64,000 nt of DNA, from the NCBI GenBank assembly GCA_965235115.1, contig OZ249447.1:21452001-21516000 (forward strand), given 5' to 3'. The translations under genes were made by a program, and so were the position numbers. This DNA is from Laetmonice hystrix. Its lineage: Eukaryota. How positions within the stretch are numbered: the first letter of the stretch is position 1; every line of letters starts with the position of its first letter. This document shows, piece by piece, positions 5,112-28,716 of this stretch. The notes beneath the pieces are model-generated. The model had not been told where the DNA came from. It was given only the letters and a program-made list of their open reading frames with translations, and searched no databases.

Positions 5112-6917
5112 TGCATTAAGGCAAGGATAGACGCCGGAAGTATGTATTACGTCGAAATGGTTTGGAGACTGTATAACCTAGATTCCCGTTTCCCGGACAG
5201 GTCCCAAATTCTACACCGCCTACTGTGTGCGGCGTATTAACAGTAAATCACCTATAAATGTAATCCGCGCTATTTAGAATTAGAATGTCACACAAATCTG
5301 AAGGCAATATTTGACTTCATCAGACAATGCAGCGCACACACACCCTGGGACGGGAGGATACGCACCACACGCACGCATACTGGACAAGGCTAAAAGCAGA
5401 CCTTATCTCAGAGGGGGAAGCTTGTATAAATGTATGGGACTATCAAAATCGACAACATGGAGTCAATACATCCATGTCACAGGGGGCTACTCCAACGGTA
5501 CAATCATCGTCACAAAAAAAGAAAAGAAAAAAAAAAGATAGCACATGTGCTTCTCAAAAGACGTCATGTCTGAATCGAGTTGTTTTCTTGGTACAATGAA
5601 AAGTCAAGGTTAAATGTATCTAGTCGCCAAAACTAAAATAATCCTGAGACTGCACAGCACGATGGACTATACCTTCGTCCGCCGTCGGCGACAGAGGAAA
5701 AGAAGTTGGTGGATCAGGAGCCTTTACTTGGGTTGAAACCAGAGTCGGAAACCTTGGAAGGGAACCTCAACTGAGCAGGAAACCTGCCAAGGACCCCAGC
5801 CCACCCAGACCACGTGTTCTCAGCCCTATCAACACGTGGTTGGTCACACCCAGGCATGAAGTGGCTCAGTTCGGGTCTGTTACCCGTTTTCTAACCTCAG
5901 GTATATAGAAATATCATAACATAAATGTATAATGGGTACACGGTGAATATACAACGAAGCAACATACTATTGCCTTCAATATTTAGTCTTAATCATAATT
6001 TATCTTAAACGTACTTAATCATCTTAATCGTAATCATTTATCTTCTTAAACATACTCATTTATCTTAACCCAAAGACTGTAGACCTTTCTAAAACAGATT
6101 ATCATCAGATATTTGTTGGAGAGCGATCAGCTTAGAACCGAAAGACATAATTTTCAGAAGTGTTTTGTTAATGACGGGACATGCTACATTTCCTAAATCT
6201 TAGCTCTTGTACCTCAGACCATCAGTGAGCTGCTAAATATACAGAAAACTAATTTTTCAAGAAACCTTTTAAACTGATCAATATTTCAAATGTTCTTTGT
6301 TTCTGGCCTATTCAATTATTCGACTGTACGCGTGTATGATGCTTAGTCAGGCGGTACTCACATACTTTTGGTTTAAGTAAAAAATAAAAATTAGTAACAG
6401 TTACACAATCTTATTGTGACCTAAAAAAGTCGCGGTGATTCTTCCTCATACAGTGTCACTACAGCACCCAATTTCTTCATCATTTTACAAATGTTGAAGC
6501 TATTTGTTAACTAATTTAAAGTTCGACAATTGCAGGACATCCTCTGTAAATGCACGCTCCCCTCTTGTTCCACTCGCCCAAGATGCTGAAAAAAATGTTG
6601 ACTAGTACAATGTTAGGTTATTCAAATATACAAATGCGTGAATCTCTTTTTTTTTCTAAGTGGTAATGACTTGGGACGCACGTCTGGGCAGACTACATGA
6701 ACTACAATCTACTGTTGTAGTCACACTAAATAGTACCGGTAGATCCAAACCTAGTCAGCAGGTGTCTCTTTGAGTCTGTACTCTAGTCATCATCACCATA
6801 ATAATAAATATCACATAACGCAGTTCACCAAGCGACAGTCTCTGTTCTACTGCTGTCGGCAGTGGTTAGCCTTAGTCCCGGGACGAGTACCACCGTTATA
6901 CAATGTCCTCTCTACTT

Positions 6918-7821
6918 ACAGACAGACACTGGTCTGTCCTATTACCACTGGCCTGTCCTATTACCATCAGTAGACAGACACTGGTCTGTCCTATTACCAT
7001 CAGTAGACAGACGCTGGCCTGTCCTATTACCATCAGTAGACAGACGCTGGCCTGTCCTATTGCCATCAGCAGACAGACGCTGGCCTGTCCTATTACCATC
7101 AGTAGACAGACGCTGGCCTGTCCTATTACCATCAGCAGACAGACGCTGGCCTGTCCTATTACCATCAGCAGACAGACGCTGGCCTCTCCTATTACCATCA
7201 GTAGACAGACACTGGCCTGTCCTATTACCATCAGTAGACAGACACCGGCCTGTCCTATTACCATCAGTAGACAGACACCGGCCTGTCCTATTACCATCAG
7301 TAGACAGACACTGGCCTGTCCTATTACCATCAGTAGACAGACACCGGCCTGTCCTATTACCACCAGTAGACAGACACCGGCCTGTCCTATTACCATCAGT
7401 AGACAGACGCTGGCCTGTCCTATTACCATCAGCAGACAGACGCTGGCCTGTCCTATTACCATCAGTAGACAGACACCGGCCTGTCCTATTACCATCAGTA
7501 GACAGACGCTGGCCTGTCCTATTACCATCAGCAGACAAACGCTGGCCTGTCCTATTGCCATCACCAGACAGACGCTGGCCTGTCCTATTACCATCAGTAG
7601 ACAGACACCGGCCTGTCCTATTACCATCAGTAGACAGACGCTGGCCTGTCCTATTACCATCAGTAGACAGACGCTGGCCTGTCCTATTACCATCAGTAGA
7701 CAGACGCTGGCCTGTCCTATTGCCATCATCAGACAGACACTGACCTGTCCTATTACCTTCAGCAGACACTGGTCTGTCCTATTACCACCAGTAGACAGAC
7801 ACTGGCCTTTCTTATTACCAG
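6918..7821. repeat. 33-bp minisatellite, ~27 copies (TGGCCTGTCCTATTACCATCAGTAGACAGACGC)
   Basis: Direct inspection; source of the 275-333 aa repetitive ORFs. Confidence 0.97.
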
Positions 7822-8590
7822 GCTGTCTTCGCTCCGGCACAACATTCGAGGACATTTTCCAACGCGCGACCTTCATCTCCGACCTTATGTAAGGCAATGA
7901 TTTTGTTAGGATTTCTTGTTACTGGCAGGGGTCGAATGGGGGCCAGTTAGGCTGCACCACTGTTCATGTGACGGCACACCCATGCAGCGGGCCACACCTC
8001 CGGACACCTTCTGCTCTTTGATGTACATGTATGTACAATGACAAATGATACACTTAGACTCTAAGTTAGAGGCTAACAGCTACGGACCATCGCCATGTCC
8101 AGCCTTAATCAAACGGTGGTGTACTCTGTGAGGTCTCATATGATAACTGGATTTCTGAGCCAACATATATGAACTGATAAACTTTCCTTTCCATTTCCCC
8201 GGCTGCGCACAAAACAGGCACTCTGAAATACACCAAACCTGTTATTGTACTTTTTGTCAATGTGTACTTATATGTAAGTAACAGTGGCAAGAATGGCATC
8301 CTGGTCAGGACCGTTTGGATGACAAGGCAGGTCAACGGTGGGCCCTCTGTGACCTCGCTATCTCCATCACCAGATCTCAATAAACGTTGTGTCCTTCTAC
8401 AACAAAGCACCATGTTTTTTTTTATAAAGCATTAATTCCCTAAGCAGACAACAGAGTGTGAACATATATATATATTACGTCCTTATGCGTCTCACATATA
8501 ATACACAGCTCCACATAAATTAATGCCATTACGATCTGGTAGAGGTTGCTACGGTGAACGCTGAGTCGCTTCAGCACCATGATGAATGGG

Positions 8591-8632: not shown

Positions 8633-8803
8633 TCACATTGTAGTTTCTGCCCTCTGGATTTTATTGAGCGAGTTTTCGGTGAAGTTTGTGGGCATGGTAG
8701 CGGGATAATTTGCACAGTTGGAAATGCCGGAATCTCGATCTCCAGCTGGCGTTGAATCTTCACACACACTCTCCAAGGCCTTGTATAACATATGGTAGTC
8801 TTC
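8633..8803 (-). CDS. PTP99A: PTP terminal coding exon 27 ([12 protein letters not shown]...RAETTM*)
   Basis: TTTGCAG acceptor; D2 end helix; TGA at 8635-8633; class I PDZ-type end E-T-T-M. Confidence 0.9.
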   Translation of the reverse strand, partial: EDYHMLYKALESVCEDSTPAGDRDSGISNCANYPATMPTNFTENSLNKIQRAETTM

Positions 8804-11800
8804 CTGCAAAAAGTAAAAAAATAACCTTCAATAAACCGTTCCTTGTGAAAACATGACCTTCAATAAACCGTTCCTTGTGAAAACATTAACCTTCAATAAA
8901 CCGTTCCTTGTGAAAACATAACCTTCAATAAACCGTTCCTTGTGAAAACATAACCTTCAATAAACCGTTCCTTGTGAAAACATAACCTTCAATAAACCGT
9001 TCCTTGTGAAAACATAACCTTCAATAAACCGTTCCTTGTGAAAACATAACCTTCAATAAACCGTTCCTTGTGAAAACATAACCTTCAATAAACCGTTCCT
9101 TGTGAAAACATAACCTTCAATAAACCGCTCCTTGTGAAAACAATCTCATTTTCTTTGATTACTACGAGACGATCCATCACCGTGTCACTCGCCATACTCC
9201 CCTTACTCCCTTTATTTGACTTTCTCAATAAAATACGAAATTTGACTTTAGAATAAAAGGGCTGTTTTAGTGAACCTGTTTAGGGATGATTCCTGGCCGC
9301 TTGAGGTGGTAGAGCTTGACGACCATGTAGACATCAGCACTGGCCTCGTGATGAAGCTGGTCGTTCAATGTGGACAGGGCGCAGAAGATTCCTGCCTCGG
9401 TGCCACCAAATCTACAACATCGGCAGAAACAGACAGAGGTCACAACCGGCGGGCATGTTCACACATTCCTGGACATTCGGCGTCAACACTTGGCGAAACA
9501 ACCAACGGCTACGTCTGGGTCGCTTGGCAACCCCTTGCGGGAAAAAATGTGAAATTATCTGTAACCAGGAATAATATACAGTTTTAATTTTAAGTTTTTA
9601 TATTTTTCTTAAACTTCGTAGTTTTCATATTTTTATTGATCGTTATTAGTGCAACAGTTGTACAAACTAGCACATTTTTTTTTATAATCTGTTTTAATTT
9701 TAGCAGAAGAGAACCATTCAGAATCATGGATCAGTAGCCTGGATAACGTACTGACTACATGAGCTATGATTGACTTGACCCATTATGTCCCTGAATGAAA
9801 TTACTAAGGACGTAGGTCGGAACATTGGTTAAGTCCACCAATAGTACAGTACTCGTTCACATCTCATACATGCAGAATGAAATTCTACAGTTAGTAACTT
9901 CAAGCACACGTGCATAAATGTCTTCTGCATAATTTTACCATCAGCTAGCTATAGTCCCTAATAGCCTCTTCAGGAAGCTTCCTATCCCTCATATACTTCT
10001 GTCAATACTGCCACACTCTGTTATTATAAGATATTAATTATCACTAAAATCTCTCAATTGCACGATAAAACAAAAGCAGGTTACCCCAACATGATAATAT
10101 TTCACGACAGTATGTAATTCTCACGCCGATTGTCCATATGGTTTCGATGGATCCTGGTTCATCGCCGACTTATGAGCAAAGAACGGTATGATACACTAAA
10201 CCACAAAAATCTCACCAAAATTAGCAAACCGGACTCCCCCTACACAACACTGGCATTTGTTGACCATCCTTAACTCCATTTTATCCGTTTAAGATCTAAC
10301 AGATATAGGTTCTATCTCATATTTCTACGGCACGCAACTTATGAACACAGACAATAAGGAAGCGGAAAATTATTAAATTAGATGTTTGGTAATTACCTAA
10401 GTATAATCAGATATATTTAGTGGTAGATCCAAAAAAAATCCGACTAGTACCATGCCCAAGGTTCCCACGCTCACCTGACCCTGAACTGATACGTTCAAGG
10501 TCATCCTCAGACAAATCAACACCATTTCCTTCAAAAATCAACGAATTTTCAACATGAAAGGACCCCCTTTTGTTTTCCATCCTAAAAAATTAATTCAGGC
10601 CCTTTAAGAAACGGTTTCTTATGTTCAAGGACTTTCAAAGATTTGACCTTTTAATATAATTACGTTTACACGCTTCTGCTAACTTTGAAGGTGCGTGGGA
10701 ACCGTGCATGCGGTAACTCGGAGCTAGCTACACATCATTCATTTGTGACGGGTAGTCTGAACACTTAGAACAACAAGTCGCCAGAGAATGAGGCGAAACA
10801 ATGAACAACTCTTCAGTGTTAGGCAAACAGTAGAAACAAAGAGACTGTATCTAATGGAACGCTGACAATGGTGACGTCATGTGGAAAGCTTAACGTGTAT
10901 GTTTACACTGTAGCAGTAGTATTGATGGAGTTATAATGTAACATACATCTACCTGCACAAAAGGACATACATGTAGTACTGTTTACAAAAGTAGTAAAGC
11001 GTACAAATTGTGGTGTCTTTGAAATGGCGCCAGAGTTCTAGCCGTAAGGTTGTTATCTATTACTAGCCAAGATAACTTCCGAAATGCATATGCAGGTTTG
11101 GTATTTATTTCTTCTCTTTTCTTAAGGGGGGGGGGGTTGTTTTGAACTTCTGAAATTACATTACCACAAACTTGAAACTTCGCTTAATTACCATATATCA
11201 TTTTCTGTGCAACGGTGAGAACCCTGGGCCTGACATACACTGAACCCCCCATGTAAAATACACTAAAAATGTAAGAAAAAGTTTATTTCCCCGATCATAA
11301 AACTGCATCATGACAATGTGACACTCTGCAAAGCAAACCTAATACAAGAGAAGACAAACAGAGAGAAAAGGTGTTTTGTATTCTCATTAACAGCGACGAG
11401 TGAGCCTTTTGGTGGTGCCTGGCCGGCGTAGAAAGAGTAGGCTCCTAGAGTCAGCAATCTTGGCGGCCATTTTACCTGTGTGATGTGGGAGAGTGGATCT
11501 TGGATGCGGGTGAGGCTGGAGGCTCCATGTGGGGCACCCGCATCATCTGGCTGTGTAAGGTCGTCAGGGCACAGAAGATGCCCGCCTCTCGCCCCCCAAA
11601 CCTGGTGGTCAAGCAACACATCGTCCATGATCGGTGGTTAGTTGGACGGCAGCACCAACGGCGACGGTAGGAAACAACGCTAGACGCGTCCTTCTACGTG
11701 CAGCTGTTGGTTCCCGGGCCCTTATGTTAGAACACTGCCCTCACCCAGCTAACCATCTACACTACCGGTCAGTGCTGCTACGATCGTAATTAATGGGTCA

Positions 11801-14800
11801 GTTGTGTTTTGTACGTGCCAGTATTTGCTGCTGTGTTAGACCTCTGGCCCAGCTTTCTACTGTTAGTAGTCCTATCCTAACTCCCTACTTATGAGACTCT
11901 GGGAAAAAAAGACTTGATCGACTGAAGTCTATGGTTGTGCTATTCAGGTCTTTAGGGCATGCAACTCCTCCGTCATGACAAGACCAGACACGCTGGCTCC
12001 TTACATAGACTTGAAGGGTTCATTCTGTAATAATGTACTCTTCGAAACCCTTCACCTAGATCCTTGTGCACAAATGATATTCGCTCTAGACTACAGACGT
12101 ACCGCCGTCCTCTTACTTTGTATGAATTATTCTCTTTATGTGTGAAGGTAGTCATGTCATCTAGTACTGAAAACTTAATTGCTAGGGTAACAGTATACCA
12201 TCCACCACTCATTCCAGTAACCTTACTACAGAACCCAGCCACCCAAGCTGTTAGATGTTTGAGGTGTGAGAAAAATGCTCCTTCCAGCGTTAACAACATT
12301 TGAGGGGTTTTACATTTTAACTTTACATATAACTATCTTAAGTAAACTGACCTAATAAAAGACAATCTGCATTAATTCATTACATTATACGGCTGAGACT
12401 TAGGCCAAGATTAAAGGTTTGTGAACCTACTTTTTTAATGACCACAACTACCCGTACGCTGCACAGCTTGAATTAAAGTTAAACGTGATAGAAATTTAAG
12501 TCCAAACTACCCTCAGTGTGATTGCATATACCAATACCTCACATGCAAACCGTGCCGTTTTGACCACGTGTTCTGGACCCCTCCTCAGAAACCTACTACA
12601 ACCATGAATACTTTGTAAATCTTGTCCCAGCACCGCTTTGCCAGCTTTTTGCTATCATCCAGACAGACCACAGACCTGTCAATCACGGTACCAAGCCCCT
12701 CCCACAGTACCCCGACCGCACGCGCCACCTGGCGGCGAACACGGGCAGCCAGTTGTACCGCACGCGCCACCTGGCGGCCGGTTGTTGTACCGGTAGGTGG
12801 AGACACTCACTTGTCGACGACGATGATTGGGCCCTCCACCTCCTTGTTCTCCTGGTGCCACGACTTCACCGTCTGAATGAGCTCGAACGCTGTCGATAGG
12901 GGCGTGCAGCTGTCCGGCCAGTACGACGTCGATATCATCCGGGTCGTGCACTCATAATCGTCCTGCAAATATACACCTTCACATTCACTGGACTGTCTTC
13001 AGGCTGCTCTTTGGTCAGTTAATAAAGAGTTGACCAGAGAATAAAGTGTCGGTTTTTACTGCGGCAGCTTCAGGGGGTGAAAAATATCTGCTTTACCTGG
13101 GTGGATTCGAGCAGGAAGTCTCGACAGATGTGACTGGGCCGCTCCTCCAGCTCGGTGAAGGTGACCTTGAAGTTACCACAGTCCATGGTCTGTCCCAGCG
13201 TCGGCCAGAACTCCATGTACTCCTGTTGTCATACAAACATGTCAACAACCAAATATTCAAACAAACTCCTTTTTTACAGACAAGCTGACCTGAAAAAATG
13301 TTATCCTGCAATTGCATTACCTGAAAAGGCAACTTGTCCTGTTTGAAAGGAAAACAATCTTACTGATCTCAAGCCTTTCCCAGAGTTTTTTTTCGTAATT
13401 TTGTGCAAAAGAAAAAGCGTCACGATAGAGTGTGATGTTTTTGAAGGCAATCCACAGAAGTCTTTCATTGCCTAGTGTTCATAGTACTAGTCAACTAGTC
13501 AGCACAAATATATCAAAATCAGGATACGCCTAATGTAAAAGTATCCTCTAAAGTGAAAGGCACTAGTAAAACATTATGTATGTAACAAAGTGTGACTGTG
13601 AATTGCATTAAACACTAAGAAAACAGGATTTGTACATGTCAGTACAGTTGTACCTTCAAGCAATCTGCTTTTTGATTTCAAGATTAACTATGTACTAAAG
13701 ATTAGACCATCCACAAGACCTGTTCTTGTGAGCGCCAAGCGCCAATATTTCCAAGAAATATGTGCATATAAGAAGTCCTTCCTGAAAATCCAATAACCTC
13801 CAGGCACTTCAACCTGTGTTTTATGGTAAATATGGAATCAGTTTTGAATGACAGAAGTTATAGATGTTTGTATATGAAAGAACAAATAATTACTGAATAG
13901 GTAAGTAGGAAAAATAAAAGTGAATTCAAATAGACAGCCGCCACCGGGAATACAATACTAAAACAGGACGGGGGTGGAACTAACACTGTTACAGGTACCG
14001 ACTAGACTGGTGGAGACAACTCTTGGAGAAAGATCAAGTTTACCCGGTACTTTCATTGCACTGTGTGTCACCTTAACAAGACCAGGTTTGGTTTGCTGAT
14101 GTTATTCTAGCATTCAGACTGATACAACTACCGTAACACAAACAAACAGAAAACAAGCACACAAATGAAAACCTCATGTATGGCTCCGTCAGGGGAAGGG
14201 TTGACATTTACTCTCGTCAGCTCTCGGATCAAAAAGAGACTTTTAATGATGAATGAAAACTAAGTGACAACATGAATAACAACCAACAAAAAAAGAGAAA
14301 GTAGTCAAATTCTATTTCTACCATAAGAGTAGATCTTAAAGGCAAGGCTTGCAGTGTGATGTTTATCCTAATAATGCTGATGCCATAACTGACAAGAAAT
14401 AACCTTACACTGAATAGGTGAAGTCAGAAAGGAAACTTCAGTAAGGCAAGCCTTGATGGTTAGGCAACCTTATGTTACACTAGGCCAAGACAAGGTTATT
14501 CCATATACAACATGTAGCTTTAATGCTACTTTCGAAGTTGGTCTTACAGCTCACTTAAAACTCAATACTTCGTACTTTCCCCATCCAATTTCTTTGGGCC
14601 ATGTAGTTTGTGCATTAAGATGCTGCTTCTGAATACATAACTTATATGTGCTATTGTCCGGAGGGTGTGTCAGAAAGGGTGTCAGAAATATACAGCCCAG
14701 TGCAAACAATAGTTTGGTGAAGAATCAAATAAACGTCTCATTGGGGTCAAAATTGACAGAAGGGTCTCAAATTAAGCGAACAGGAACCTTGTAATAAATC

Positions 14801-17800: not shown

Positions 17801-20800
17801 GTTTAAACTTTCTGATTGGGTGGTGTGCTTATAGCAGTCAAAGAGAAGCACAAGAAAAACCAGGCCCTTGTAACATGACAAAGTTGTGCTGACCTCTGTT
17901 TGGACTAGGTAATTGCGCTGGTTCCGGATGTGAGACAAGAACCCATATACATTCAGCGTGTTTTTATCTTTGATTTGTCGCATCATGCTGTCGAGCACAA
18001 TGTAGGTGCCTGTCCGCCCGACTCCCGCACTGGAACGACACATCAATATACAATCTCATAATACAAATCATTAACTGTGGTACGACTTCCAAAGGTATAT
18101 GAAGATCAAAGGAAGGCTTAAAAAATAGACTATGTAGGAAAAAATAAAAAGGTAGAACAGTTAGACCCTCTAGTGCTATAACAATATTACCGGTATACCT
18201 GTAATACCATTATAGCATTTTAACAGTATTAAATCAAAGCAGGTCAAGAAATTCACTAAGATAAAGTTGACGTTGAATGGACCCGCAGGCTGATAGTTGT
18301 GGGGCCTCACCTGCAGTGTATGATGATGGGCCCAGCGGTCTCGCCAGACGCTGCCGCCGACTTGCGCACATACATGAGTACAGGCAGGGTGAAGTCAGGC
18401 ACGCCGTGGTCAGGCCAGTCGGTATAATGGTACTGAAACACCACCCGCTCTGTGGCTCCCTTCTGTAACCAGGTAACACAGAAATAAAACCTATCATTAT
18501 ATGTAGGCCACTCTGTCAACTCATACTATAACCTTATGGGAATCGAAAAGGAAATTAACTATCTAGTATTATTTACATCATTAAATACCGGTATACATGG
18601 TGTATATTATAAAAAAAAAGTCTGAAGAAAAATTCAACCATTTTGATACTTTGTGAAGCATTGATGGTAAGAAAGGCAAATAAAAAAAAAGTAGTGAACA
18701 TTTCAAAACACATCTGGGCGAGTTCCTTTTCAGCATGCAGAACAAGCAGAGATGATGACGTCTGACTCTTTACATTAGAGAGAGCGTGTGCACTTATTAG
18801 GATCACAAAGCTTTACTGGGGTAGTCTTCTTAACAAGAAAAATATGTTAGTTTAGAATGGTTGCTGTGTATCCAAAAAGAAGCTTTCAAAACGCTGTGTA
18901 TTTAATGTATACATGTACTGGAGTCAGGTAACTTGTAGTCAGACCCCTCTTTTCTCAGGAAAATAATTTACAGCCTCACTCTCATGAAACTGACAGACGC
19001 TGGGTCAGAGGTAAAGCTACGGAATATGATCCTACAACTGTGGAGACATACTTCCAGGTATCAAACCATTTTAAAAGCCCAAACACGGTGAAACCTCAAG
19101 TCCTGTACCCCGACTTGTAGTAATTCCTAGAACTTCAAGGAGTGGGTTTCTGGTAGTTTTTTTTTTTATATTTATCTCATCTACCGGTAATCATCTTGGG
19201 ATTACGCGGATGATTACAGGTAGAGGAGTTTGAATGGTTAGGCTGGGCAGGGTGGGAAATCTCGATGTTGTCATGGTAACCATACCTGAATAGGGGCTGT
19301 CCCTAAAAGCCTCTCCCCGGCTGCTTTCTGCAACAGTTCCCAACATAAGGCAAAGCAATAAATAAAAATCTACTGATGAGTTTGAGATATCATTTAGTAA
19401 CTGTCCGCTCTGGACGGATTGAAATTTAGTAATCTTCTGACCGATCACAATTAGTTTTAAGGTGCATGCTTGAATCATTTGGGTTAACCTTGATCTTTAC
19501 AATGAAGCTTGCTTACTACCGTTTGAATACAGCGTGCTCTCTTTTCTATGATCTCATCATTTCTATGCTCTTATTCCACAAGGAGGTATTTTCATTCTCA
19601 ACGCATCCAGTATATGATTGTAGTAGTTTCAATTCAAGACATTTAGGTCTGTTTTCATCCAACTTCTTAAGGAAATAAGACTACATTATTGCTGGGTCTG
19701 AATCTCACGAGAAGGACCCGTCCTTGGGTGAACTAACGATTTGCTAAAGACTTGTCTTACGGCATCACTAAATATCTTCTTTATTATGTACCGATAACAA
19801 AAAAAATAAATGACAGTTCTAAATCATAAAATATATATTTTATGATTTGATACATCTTTCTGCAAGAATAATATATTTTAAAAACTCCTAGGTTATCACA
19901 GAATTATGCTTTTTCACGTTTCTAGAGTTATCTCATAATTATCTGAACTACGGTACATTTAATCAACCTCCTTCTCAGCGATTCATTTTGCCACCAAAGT
20001 ATACTAGGGCTTGTGTAACAACTACCCTTACAATGTTCTGTGGCCAATTTTAGAGGCACTGAGTAATGGTAATGCAGACCTTTACACATTCCTAAACAGA
20101 GTAGCAACAAAGTTTTACCGTATAAGCAAACCAAGTACAAGAGAATAACCTTAAGAATTAACTTACGATAAGAAAATTAAACATATCTTTTCCTTTTTGC
20201 ACCCACAATGCGCGTATTTCAGACGATAACTTGCAAACTTAACAGTAGAGGATTTTTCAGTGCTTTGAATTGCCACTTACGTACTACTATAGATCTAGGG
20301 CTGAACTTGATCATTTATTTACAGGACTTCAAAGGTAAGAAAGCAGCCATTACAAGTGAACGGAAGTAAATATTTCCTATATCATTCCTGAATGTTTACT
20401 AATCCATTAGTCAGTTTACAATCGTTTTACCCAATAACATTGCCCAGTAATTTTTTTAATGCCAAGATTACAGTACCAGGATTTCATTCCATTCAGATTA
20501 CAGTCTGCTCCACCAATACTAATTTTGACCCTCTCAAAGTCTACAACATGCCAGTGTGTCGGTACCGTGTTATCACTTGAAGGATCCTCGTAAGTCTATT
20601 ATGCAGCTATTCTGATATTTCATATGGTTGTCACAACTCAGAGCCAAGCATGTCCCACAGTCACTAATGATCGGAGAGGAAGTGAAGTATATGTCAGAAA
20701 TAATCACTCAATAATAACGACTGAGATATACACCCAACATAGCCTGCTTTGTGGGGGCTGTTTCTTCTTCCAAAAGATATCCCAAACCATGCAACTCTGG

Positions 20801-26800: not shown

Positions 26801-28716
26801 ACAGGTCGCTTGACTGCTGTATGGGGGGGAAATAAAGGCACGTACATACATTTATTGTTGTCAACTTAGATTCACCTCTGGTTGAATGGAGGACAGGGGA
26901 TACCACCAGGGACAGGGGACAGAAGCATACACCAGCACACGGAGCCACTAGGAAGCCGAGTTGTGTGGTGCACAGTGATGATGATGTTTTTCATAGCATG
27001 TGAGATATTACCGGTACTAGTTGGAGCAATGTGCCTTTTACATACACCCCTGCTGTTAAGAAGCAGCAGAATCTTGAGCGTTGTAACCATGAGTTTATTT
27101 CTGACTGTATGTTATGATTGTAATGTTACAAACACGAGTTGTTCTTAGTTTCACTGTGATCTTCAATCTGTGAGTTAGGCGAGTTAAAGTGCTACAGACA
27201 TCACATAGGCACCTTTACTGATCTAGATAGATCACTGCGAGTTGTAGACGTGTCCGGGATAGGTTTTTCTGATAAATTCTCTCAGAAAGTAACACTTGTA
27301 AAAAGATTGACAAAAGGAATCACGCGACACATCGCTGTCTTGCTCTCCACTGCTCTTGACCGAAAACCGGAAGGGATGTGTGCACGGGAATTGGTCATTT
27401 TGATCACGGATTCACATTTACAGAACAGCTCACGTTTACAGAACAACGACAAATCACAAGTCTTATCTGGTACAAAATTCATGTTAATTGTGATGTCTGT
27501 AGCACTTTAACACAATGGCGTCCAACTGCCCCCTCCCCTCCCAAACCTGTGTAGGTACTCTTGTCTCCACTTCCATTCTAACAACTCACCGTAACTCTCA
27601 GGATGCACGGCTCCATTATCAGTTGTGTTACTCGAGTCCGGGATAGCAGTGAAAAGATAGCTTTGCGTCATGTATCTCCTGCAAGAGAATGCCACATACA
27701 TGAACAATGCATTGAAGCTACACAACTTGCAAGTTTACAGAAAATGCCATATACGTGAACTATGCATTAAAACTACACAACTTGCAAGTTTATAGAAAAT
27801 GCCACATACATGAACTAATCATTGAAACTACACAACTTGCAAGTTTACAACAATGCTGAATTTATTTTATTTATTTATTTAGTTTATTTAATTCCCATAA
27901 GTACCCGTATGACCCACTTCCGTATCTTTTAAGTCTTTTACTTGCTATTTGTTTACTAATCCACTAACTGCTCTCACTAGTTTAGCTTCCCTTACCTGAA
28001 TACAAAACATATGAGGAGGGCAATGATGAGGATGAGGGCAGTGACCACAATGCCTGCAACAACTCCAGTTGTCAGTGAGGAGCTTCGGCTGTTGGGGTCA
28101 GACATGGTTGTATCCGGACCTGGAGGGTAGCAATCATTCATTAACGTCTGCAATTCTACCATCATCCCAAACCATCAGTACTCAGTTCATAATTAAGATC
28201 TTTCTTACGCTTAAGCCTTCTGATTCGCTGGTCTTAATCAGACCAGCCAATCAGAAGTATTAAGCTTAAGCTTACAAATATCATCAATCTCTCTATGTAT
28301 AATAATACAGAAAAAAATATTTTAAAAGTTAAAACATCTTTCAGTTGTGCCCGTCATGAAGGAGCAGATGCACACCGGTAGAATTAAATACAGAAACTAT
28401 ATAACTTTGAAACAACGGTCACGTATTCAACAGAAATCAATTGATAATGTGCATTACCAGAAATGGCAACCTTTTTAAAGCTCTTAAATATGTTGAATGT
28501 TTCTAATTGTTTTACACAGTTGAAAGACAAACAGTCCATGGATTTATGTTTATGTGTTTGGTCATATATACTAAAATCAATTCAATCAATAATTGGTCCA
28601 TGTCATGTGACGTCATAATACAGACGACTTTCAAATACCCTCAGAATTTCACACCAATTCTCTGGTGTGCTGCAAAACCTTCCCGTTTCTAACAACACAA
28701 CTGTGTGATGATGATA

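What the first reader, a model, noticed from the sequence alone, without database searches (positions are those of the whole stretch)
11476..11601. Hidden duplicate of the D2 pseudo-active-site exon (26b)
Seen: 2 kb upstream of exon 26 is a second exon with intact splice sites, reading [19 protein letters not shown] against [19 protein letters not shown]. The differences include synonymous third positions, a sign of past protein-level selection. The 3' half diverges into [22 protein letters not shown] (Pro/Ser-rich). It is 126 nt, phase 2-2, whereas exon 26 is 136 nt, phase 2-0. Three readings: (a) a cassette adding 42 aa, giving two copies of the D2 P-loop helix; (b) a mutually exclusive exon that shifts the last exon into its second open frame; (c) a former 136-nt twin with a 10-nt deletion, since the shifted 3' half aligns L, P and Q with exon 26 when anchored at the donor. 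Established: D2 domains of receptor PTPs are mostly inactive and regulate D1 and binding partners. I know of no described duplicated D2 exon in R5/PTP99A genes, but could not search. This is the best candidate for an undescribed system here.
Basis: partly seen in the sequence, partly recalled or inferred. Interest (0 to 1): 0.8.

Follow-up and report, generated by a model that had tools for sequence, protein, structure and literature searches.

The report
Partial intronic copy of phosphatase exon
A worm receptor tyrosine phosphatase gene carries, inside one intron, an old partial copy of the next exon that still looks like a usable in-frame exon, but no RNA data exist and nine related animals lack it, so it is an unproven candidate, not a new system.

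Summary
On the minus strand, 11476-11601 is an open 126-nt unit between an AG and CAG|GTAAAA. It lies 2,064 nt upstream of the 136-nt exon 26 (9276-9411). The first 19 codons match exon 26 at 14/19 residues and 40/57 bases, and 10 of the 17 base differences are at third codon positions. Exon 26 is its best non-self match in the 627-Mb genome, and there is no other copy. The homology ends at codon 19: the 3' half and both intron flanks are not significantly similar.

The substitution pattern resembles true orthologue comparisons (pN 0.17-0.18, pS about 0.7). A model that is neutral since birth fits poorly (p about 0.005-0.03). The splice sites fall within the range of the gene's real exons. DNA contigs confirm the sequence, with no indel.

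No RNA run is available. Nine relatives (56-80% identical in exon 25, including Owenia, Lingula and Tubulanus) have a single exon 26 and nothing like 26b. The mutually exclusive reading fails on length and phase.

I put about 50% on an unused or decaying relic and about 30% on a rarely used in-frame 42-aa cassette. It is a new member of a known kind, intronic tandem exon duplicates.

The parts
12811..12962 (-). Exon 25 of the phosphatase gene (D2 domain; ends ..GPIIVVD plus AA of a Lys codon); phase 0 to 2
   Evidence: Sequence. Junctions fitted against the Owenia orthologue. Pfam Y_phosphatase profile positions 133-175.
11602..11603 (-). AG acceptor dinucleotide in front of 26b; the tract before it has 11 pyrimidines in 20 but only 6 T
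   Evidence: Pyrimidine content is within the range of 12 fitted acceptors of this gene (8-15 of 20). T content is the lowest of them.
11544..11601 (-). Homologous 5' segment of 26b: one phase base plus 19 codons (pseudo-P-loop and helix alpha-4 copy), 14/19 residues and 40/57 bases identical to exon 26, no indel
11476..11543 (-). Non-homologous 3' segment of 26b: open Pro/Ser-rich reading frame of 22 codons plus two bases, ending CAG before the donor
   Evidence: no significant similarity to the 3' half of exon 26; translation.
11474..11475 (-). GT donor of 26b (CAG|GTAAAA); if it is not used, the frame reads Arg then TAA
   Evidence: comparison with the gene's other donors.
9276..9411 (-). 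Exon 26, the constitutive parent exon (136 nt, phase 2 to 0); carries two synonymous variants in the sampled individual
   Evidence: Y_phosphatase profile 179-220; variants at 9345 and 9393, both third positions.
8636..8803 (-). Coding part of the last exon (helix alpha-6 and C-terminal tail, with stop); also open for 60 codons in the frame that 26b would impose if exon 26 were skipped
11449..11883 (.). G+C-rich (about 54%) stretch around 26b without any variant between the two haplotypes, in an intron that otherwise differs at roughly 1 site in 100

Best explanation
26b is a real but partial tandem duplicate of exon 26. An old duplication, confined to this worm's lineage, placed a copy of the exon's acceptor side and first 19 codons (pseudo-P-loop and helix alpha-4 of the inactive D2 domain) into what is now a 3.4-kb intron. 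That copy is joined to unrelated sequence that happens to stay open and end at a good donor. My most likely reading is that it is not part of the working mRNA today. It would be a relic, either a former alternative exon that has lost its 3' half to indels, or a copy that was never used. In that case the main product joins exon 25 directly to exon 26, as in every relative examined. Shown: the homology, its limits, its uniqueness in the genome, the exon geometry, and its absence from nine relatives. Inferred: that it is silent now.
For: Homology covers only about 58 nt. The 3' half and both flanks are at noise level. Length and exit phase differ from the parent exon (126 against 136 nt). Used in place of exon 26 it would shift the frame. 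Used together with exon 26 it would put a second copy of a buried core helix into a compact PTP fold; this second point rests on general knowledge of the PTP fold, not on a tool. Its acceptor has the lowest T content of 13 compared. Nine relatives have one exon 26 and no 26b-like sequence in a much shorter intron of 95-1,965 nt, or no intron at all. They are L011, L012/L013, L014/L015, L016, L017, L018, Tubulanus L019, Owenia L020 and Lingula L021. All orthologous proteins and mRNA-like contigs read ..VVD-K/R-xGG.. straight into exon 26. Published surveys find thousands of unannotated intronic exon copies, of which only some are expressed (PMC9013439).
Against: The first 19 codons differ from exon 26 mostly at third positions (5, 2 and 10 differences by codon position). 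pN is 0.17-0.18 and pS about 0.7 (0.17/0.71 over the 19 codons; 0.18/0.73 over the 18 codons compared with orthologues). This is the same pattern as exon 26 against its true orthologues. A simulation with 26b neutral since birth reaches the observed pattern in at most 0.5-3% of runs. There is no indel in the homologous part. The frame is open over all 42 codons, AG and a strong donor are present, the length is a multiple of three, and there is no variant in or around it in the sampled individual. The residues kept (GG, IFCAL, TL, Q) are those conserved across orthologues. Three of the five changed positions are ones that vary freely among orthologues; the other two (D17S, L19M) fall at moderately conserved positions. 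All the relatives examined are distant, so absence from them says little about recent function.
Confidence: 0.5

Rival explanations
1. 26b is a working optional cassette exon. When spliced 25-26b-26 it adds 42 residues in frame. Its own pseudo-P-loop and helix (Arg in place of Thr in the loop, four surface changes on the helix) follow the exon-25 strand and pack into D2. The Pro/Ser-rich tail and the original copy are then displaced as a loop, giving a D2 variant with altered regulatory or partner-binding behaviour, probably in a minor or tissue-restricted isoform.
For: Frame-preserving length, open frame, AG acceptor and CAG|GTAAAA donor comparable to the gene's real sites. Third-position bias and pN/pS like true orthologues, with the neutral model disfavoured. 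Core-facing residues are retained and three of the five replacements fall at positions that vary among orthologues. No variants in a 435-nt stretch around it. The similarity stops at the acceptor rather than running into the intron.
Against: No RNA evidence of any kind. Absent from nine relatives. A duplicated buried helix inside a PTP domain is structurally awkward (inference from the known fold; not modelled here). The selection test rests on 19 codons and is exposed to ascertainment bias across a large scan.
Confidence: 0.3
2. 26b is an alternative terminal exon. Exon 25 splices to 26b, the donor is not used, translation stops two codons later (Arg, TAA), and the transcript is polyadenylated inside the intron. 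The result is a receptor with a truncated D2 ending in a Ser-Pro-containing tail.
For: Read-through of the donor gives an immediate stop. AATAAA lies about 190 nt downstream on the coding strand, at 11282-11287.
Against: AATAAA is frequent in these A+T-rich introns: 122 matches on both strands of the window, against about 69 expected by chance. A D2 lacking helices alpha-5 and alpha-6 is unlikely to fold, which makes constraint on the helix copy hard to explain. No RNA evidence.
Confidence: 0.07
3. 26b is a mutually exclusive partner of exon 26. A 25-26b-27 product reads the last exon in its second open frame and ends in a different 61-residue tail.
For: The shifted frame of the last exon is open for 60 codons. 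The two exons are tandem paralogues.
Against: Length and exit phase differ, so this is not a like-for-like swap. The product would lack helices alpha-5 and alpha-6. No complementary intronic boxes were found. An open second frame of this length has roughly a 5-10% chance expectation (my estimate from stop-codon frequency).
Confidence: 0.04
4. The resemblance is a chance match and there is no homology.
For: At the DNA level alone, one of 200 shuffles reached the same local score in a 1.3 x 1.35 kb search space.
Against: It is the best non-self protein hit in 627 Mb, and it lies 2 kb away on the same strand, in register with an acceptor. It is detected independently with the Owenia protein. Random placement of 17 substitutions gives 14 or more identities in 0.04% of trials.
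Confidence: 0.02

Closest known systems
Unannotated intronic tandem exon duplicates (Letunic et al. 2002 as cited in, and Ivanov and Pervouchine 2022, PMC9013439)
   Same: An exon-like copy of a neighbouring exon sits in the adjacent intron, on the same strand, with splice-site dinucleotides. It was found by similarity, not by annotation.
   Different: Only the 5' 58 nt are homologous, and length and exit phase differ from the parent. The copy is restricted to one lineage and there are no expression data.
Mutually exclusive exon pairs made by tandem duplication (for example SCN-alpha exon 5a/5b, PMC12772994; ATE1 7a/7b, PMC7797038; titles and abstracts seen)
   Same: Tandem paralogous exons that encode the same structural element of a domain.
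   Different: Those pairs have equal length and phase, are conserved over long distances, and often have competing RNA structures. Here the lengths are 126 and 136 nt, the copy is absent from nine relatives, and no complementary boxes were found.
PTP99A-like receptor tyrosine phosphatases of lophotrochozoans (Owenia CAH1784819.1, Lingula XP_013379533.1 named tyrosine-protein phosphatase 99A, Tubulanus XP_074645008.1)
   Same: The host gene is their orthologue. It has Ig plus fibronectin repeats, two phosphatase domains, a D2 with Asp in place of the catalytic Cys (..VVDKFGG..), and the same intron position between exons 25 and 26.
   Different: Those genes have a short intron there (95-360 nt) and a single exon 26. 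This genome has a 3.4-kb intron holding 26b.

Membership tests
Tandem exon duplicate | Significant similarity to a neighbouring exon of the same gene, on the same strand, in the adjoining intron | tested here: met
   Exon 26 is the best non-self hit of 26b genome-wide and lies 2,064 nt away. 14/19 residues match.
Tandem exon duplicate | Copy not explained by a repeat family, a paralogous gene or a retro-copied mRNA | tested here: met
   The DNA is unique in the genome. Other phosphatase genes match at only 26-39%. The sequence upstream of 26b does not resemble the end of exon 25 (p 0.18).
Mutually exclusive exon pair | Same length modulo 3 and same entry and exit phase, so that either exon alone keeps the frame | tested here: not met
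   126 nt phase 2-2 against 136 nt phase 2-0. 26b alone shifts the last exon.
Mutually exclusive exon pair | Competing intronic RNA base-pairing (selector and docking sequences) | tested here: inconclusive
   Only three short, imperfect inverted repeats lie in the two introns, and none flanks 26b. Without close relatives no covariation test is possible.
Mutually exclusive exon pair | One and only one of the pair is present in mature mRNA | not testable with these tools
   No RNA run holds this gene.
Cassette (optional) coding exon | Length divisible by three, no in-frame stop, AG and GT in place | tested here: met
   126 nt, 42 codons including the junction codons, AG|G and CAG|GTAAAA. Site quality is within the range of 12 fitted junctions.
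Cassette (optional) coding exon | Inclusion seen in transcripts | not testable with these tools
   Two run searches returned only DNA contigs of one sample. The protein databases hold no product containing 26b.
Cassette (optional) coding exon | Conservation of the exon in related species | tested here: not met
   Absent from nine relatives, which are 56-80% identical in exon 25. All are distant, so this is weak evidence.
Cassette (optional) coding exon | Signature of purifying selection on the encoded peptide | tested here: inconclusive
   pN 0.17, pS 0.71, differences 5, 2 and 10 by codon position. The neutral model is reached in 0.5-3% of simulations. The test rests on only 19 codons and is subject to ascertainment bias.
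PTP99A-like / R5-like receptor phosphatase (host gene) | Two tandem PTP domains with Asp replacing the catalytic Cys in D2 | tested here: met
   D1 has the ..SAGVGRTG.. motif near 18000. D2 reads ..IIVVDKFGGTEAG... Exons 25 and 26 match the Pfam Y_phosphatase profile, below the cut-off because they are fragments.
PTP99A-like / R5-like receptor phosphatase (host gene) | Orthology to proteins named PTP99A | tested here: met
   The best full-length hits are Owenia, Lingula (one isoform named phosphatase 99A) and Tubulanus proteins, colinear with the window.
PTP99A-like / R5-like receptor phosphatase (host gene) | Carbonic-anhydrase-like ectodomain of vertebrate R5 (PTPRG/PTPRZ) | not tested
   The ORFs show Ig and fibronectin-like segments. 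I did not search for a carbonic-anhydrase domain.

The most novel reading that the evidence does not exclude
26b is a translated, lineage-specific exon that lets this worm's PTP99A-like receptor swap the pseudo-P-loop and core helix of its inactive D2 domain. The 26b copy (Arg-containing loop, altered helix surface) would pack into the fold. The original copy and a Ser-Pro-rich linker would be extruded as a 42-residue loop. This would be a protein-level alternative of a buried element, achieved with a cassette exon and not with a mutually exclusive pair.
Probability: 0.25. Interest if true: 0.55.

Novelty: new member of a known kind. Interest (0 to 1): 0.3.

Why it matters
If 26b is used, it would be an unusual way to vary a pseudo-phosphatase domain, by duplicating and replacing its core loop and helix. 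It would give a direct handle on what the D2 pseudo-active site does in receptor phosphatases. If it is a relic, it is one more case of the common fate of tandem exon duplicates. It would also be a useful caution: 19 codons with a coding-like substitution pattern and intact splice signals do not prove an exon.

Tried and rejected
- **RNA evidence.** Two searches for sequencing runs (the 4.4-kb region, and the last exon with its 3' end) returned only three DNA contig sets from one sample. Junction counting was therefore impossible.
- **Reads.** Reads were laid on those DNA sets. It confirms the 26b sequence without indel, so the 10-nt length difference is not an assembly slip in that sample.
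- **Protein databases.** The 26b reading frame found nothing. An exon-25 profile search found no relative closer than 80%. Two further searches added nothing.
- **Metagenome scan.** The exon-25 scan gave two more distant loci, both with a single exon 26.
- **Retro-copy origin.** Rejected: the sequence upstream of 26b does not resemble exon 25.
- **Origin from a paralogous gene or a repeat.** Rejected.
- **Homology of the intron flanks.** Not significant.
- **Homology of the 3' halves.** Not significant at protein level and only a hint at DNA level.
- **Known RNA families.** None found.
- **Selector-type RNA pairing.** Nothing convincing.
- **Internal promoter or CpG island.** CpG content is unremarkable.
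- **Structure prediction of the cassette isoform.** Not run, because a spliced protein has no reference and I did not type long sequences.

Full report
**Anatomy**

The window carries a receptor tyrosine phosphatase gene on the minus strand. It has Ig and fibronectin-like exons, a transmembrane segment near 28100, an active D1 domain and an inactive D2 domain. I fitted the junctions of the phosphatase part against the Owenia orthologue.
- Exon 25 is 12962-12811. It ends ..GPIIVVD plus two bases of a Lys codon.
- Exon 26 is 9411-9276, 136 nt, phase 2 to 0.
- The last exon starts at 8803 and stops at 8636.
- 26b is 11601-11476, 126 nt. It lies between ..ccaccAG and GTaaaa, and is open throughout.

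A 25-26b-26 product stays in frame and gains 42 residues. A 25-26b-27 product shifts the last exon into a second frame that is open for 60 codons. Reading through the 26b donor gives Arg and then a stop.

**Is the resemblance real?**

Yes. The first 19 codons match exon 26 at 14 of 19 residues and 40 of 57 bases, with no gap. In a six-frame search of the 627-Mb genome, exon 26 is the best non-self match of 26b. It lies 2 kb away on the same strand and starts at the same offset from an acceptor. The next hits are other phosphatase genes at 39% or less. The DNA around 26b is single-copy. The Owenia protein also detects 26b independently.

**Limits of the homology**

The similarity is confined to about 58 nt.
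- The upstream and downstream intron flanks are not significantly alike (p 0.11 and 0.32).
- The 3' half of 26b does not resemble the 3' half of exon 26 in any reading frame (p 0.25-0.58).
- A DNA alignment anchored at both ends gives only a hint (z 1.2-1.7, p 0.06-0.13), and it needs several gaps.
- The sequence upstream of 26b does not resemble the end of exon 25, so a copy derived from spliced mRNA is unlikely.

26b is therefore one of two things. It may be a partial duplicate fused to unrelated sequence. Or it may be a full twin whose 3' half has been scrambled by indels. I cannot tell these apart.

**Selection signature**

The 17 base differences fall 5, 2 and 10 on codon positions 1, 2 and 3. 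By Nei-Gojobori counting, pN is 0.17 and pS is 0.71.

I simulated a model in which 26b drifts neutrally from birth while exon 26 accepts only silent changes. The observed combination then appears in at most 2.8% of runs (position counts) or 0.5% of runs (identity plus third-position differences), at any branch length.

26b is no closer to its own exon 26 (69% of bases, 13/18 residues) than to the orthologous exon of a distant relative, L011 (67%, 13/18). Exon 26 itself is 56-72% identical to its orthologues. Those comparisons show the same pN range (0.11-0.24) and saturated pS.

The residues 26b keeps are those conserved in all orthologues: GG, FCAL, TL and Q. Three of its five replacements fall at positions that vary freely among orthologues.

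This looks like a stretch that was translated and constrained for a long time. However, it rests on 19 codons, and it was picked out of a very large scan because it looked this way.

**Splice sites and composition**

The donor CAG|GTAAAA is as good as several constitutive donors of this gene, and better than the donor of exon 26 (CAG|GTTCAC). The acceptor tract has 11 pyrimidines in 20, inside the range of 8-15 seen in 12 fitted acceptors, but its T content is the lowest. 26b lies in a G+C-rich stretch (54-60%) that extends about 280 nt upstream of it into the intron. CpG content is unremarkable.

**Reads**

No RNA run holds this gene. Three DNA contig sets from one sample confirm 26b base for base, with no indel, so the 126-nt length is real in that sample. 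Between the two haplotypes there is no variant from 11449 to 11883, although the surrounding intron differs at roughly one site in a hundred. Exon 26 carries two third-position variants, which I worked out to be synonymous. The variant-free stretch is suggestive but weak evidence.

**Relatives**

An exon-25 search of 1.8 billion representative proteins found no sequence from this species. The nearest hits were 56-80% identical. Named orthologues come from Owenia fusiformis, Lingula anatina (one isoform named phosphatase 99A) and Tubulanus polymorphus. I examined the DNA of nine relatives.
- L011: intron of about 320 nt.
- L012/L013: intron of about 1,965 nt.
- L014/L015: exons 25 and 26 are contiguous, with no intron.
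- L016: intron of about 1,550 nt.
- L017: intron of about 770 nt.
- L018: intron of about 450 nt.
- Tubulanus L019: about 95 nt. Owenia L020: about 270 nt. Lingula L021: about 360 nt.

Each has exactly one exon 26 and nothing like 26b. The orthologous proteins and the mRNA-like contigs P0012 and P0042 join exon 25 directly to exon 26. The intron position is therefore ancient. Its 3.4-kb size and 26b are peculiar to this lineage. All of these relatives are distant, so recent function is not excluded.

**Weighing**
- Against a working exon: the partial homology; the unequal length and phase; the structural cost of a second copy of a buried helix inside a PTP fold (my inference from the known fold, not modelled); absence from relatives; and the published finding that most intronic exon copies are not detectably expressed (PMC9013439).
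- For a working exon: the coding-like substitution pattern; no indel in the homologous part; an open frame; intact and reasonable splice sites; a frame-preserving length; and no variants.

I put about 50% on a relic that is silent now, whether it was once used or never used. I put about 30% on an optional in-frame cassette, about 7% on an alternative terminal exon, about 4% on frame-shifting mutually exclusive use, and about 2% on chance. The mutually exclusive reading fails its defining test. The cassette reading passes the sequence tests but lacks RNA and conservation.

**Comparison and novelty**

This is a new member of a known kind: an unannotated tandem exon duplicate lying in an intron. 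My searches surfaced no report of a duplicated D2 exon in this phosphatase family, but those searches are limited. I did not test that note. That finding is on other DNA.

Noticed in passing
window 8822-9206: A 32-nt unit is repeated about twelve times head to tail in the intron between exon 26 and the last exon. Several copies are identical.
   Followed up: no
window 6900-7920: A long minisatellite lies downstream of the gene's stop. It stays open in two minus-strand frames for 278-340 codons, with a repeating peptide pattern. It lies in or after the likely 3' untranslated region.
   Followed up: no
window 12715-12778: A perfect 22-nt direct repeat, 42 nt apart, lies in the G+C-rich start of the intron just after exon 25.
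   Followed up: no
window 10562-10659: All three DNA contig sets contain a form that skips 96 nt here. This is probably a heterozygous deletion in the intron between 26b and exon 26.
   Followed up: no
L016:10909-10997: In one relative, the last nine or so codons of exon 26 (HLKRPGVLP-like) recur twice more, in other frames, just inside the following intron. Small tandem duplications at this exon are therefore not unique to the window's species.
   Followed up: partly
L014:91-378 and L015:62-349: The closest relative found (80% identical in exon 25, from ocean metagenome contigs) has exons 25 and 26 contiguous in DNA. The otherwise ancient phase-2 intron has been lost there.
   Followed up: partly
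L011:991-1230: In this relative, exons 24 and 25 are one continuous reading frame, so that intron is missing. Its exon 26 carries the same Arg (GGREAG) as 26b.
   Followed up: partly
window 11449-11883: A 435-nt stretch with no difference between the two haplotypes covers 26b and 280 nt of G+C-rich intron upstream of it, with variants immediately on both sides. It could be a constrained intronic element unrelated to coding.
   Followed up: partly
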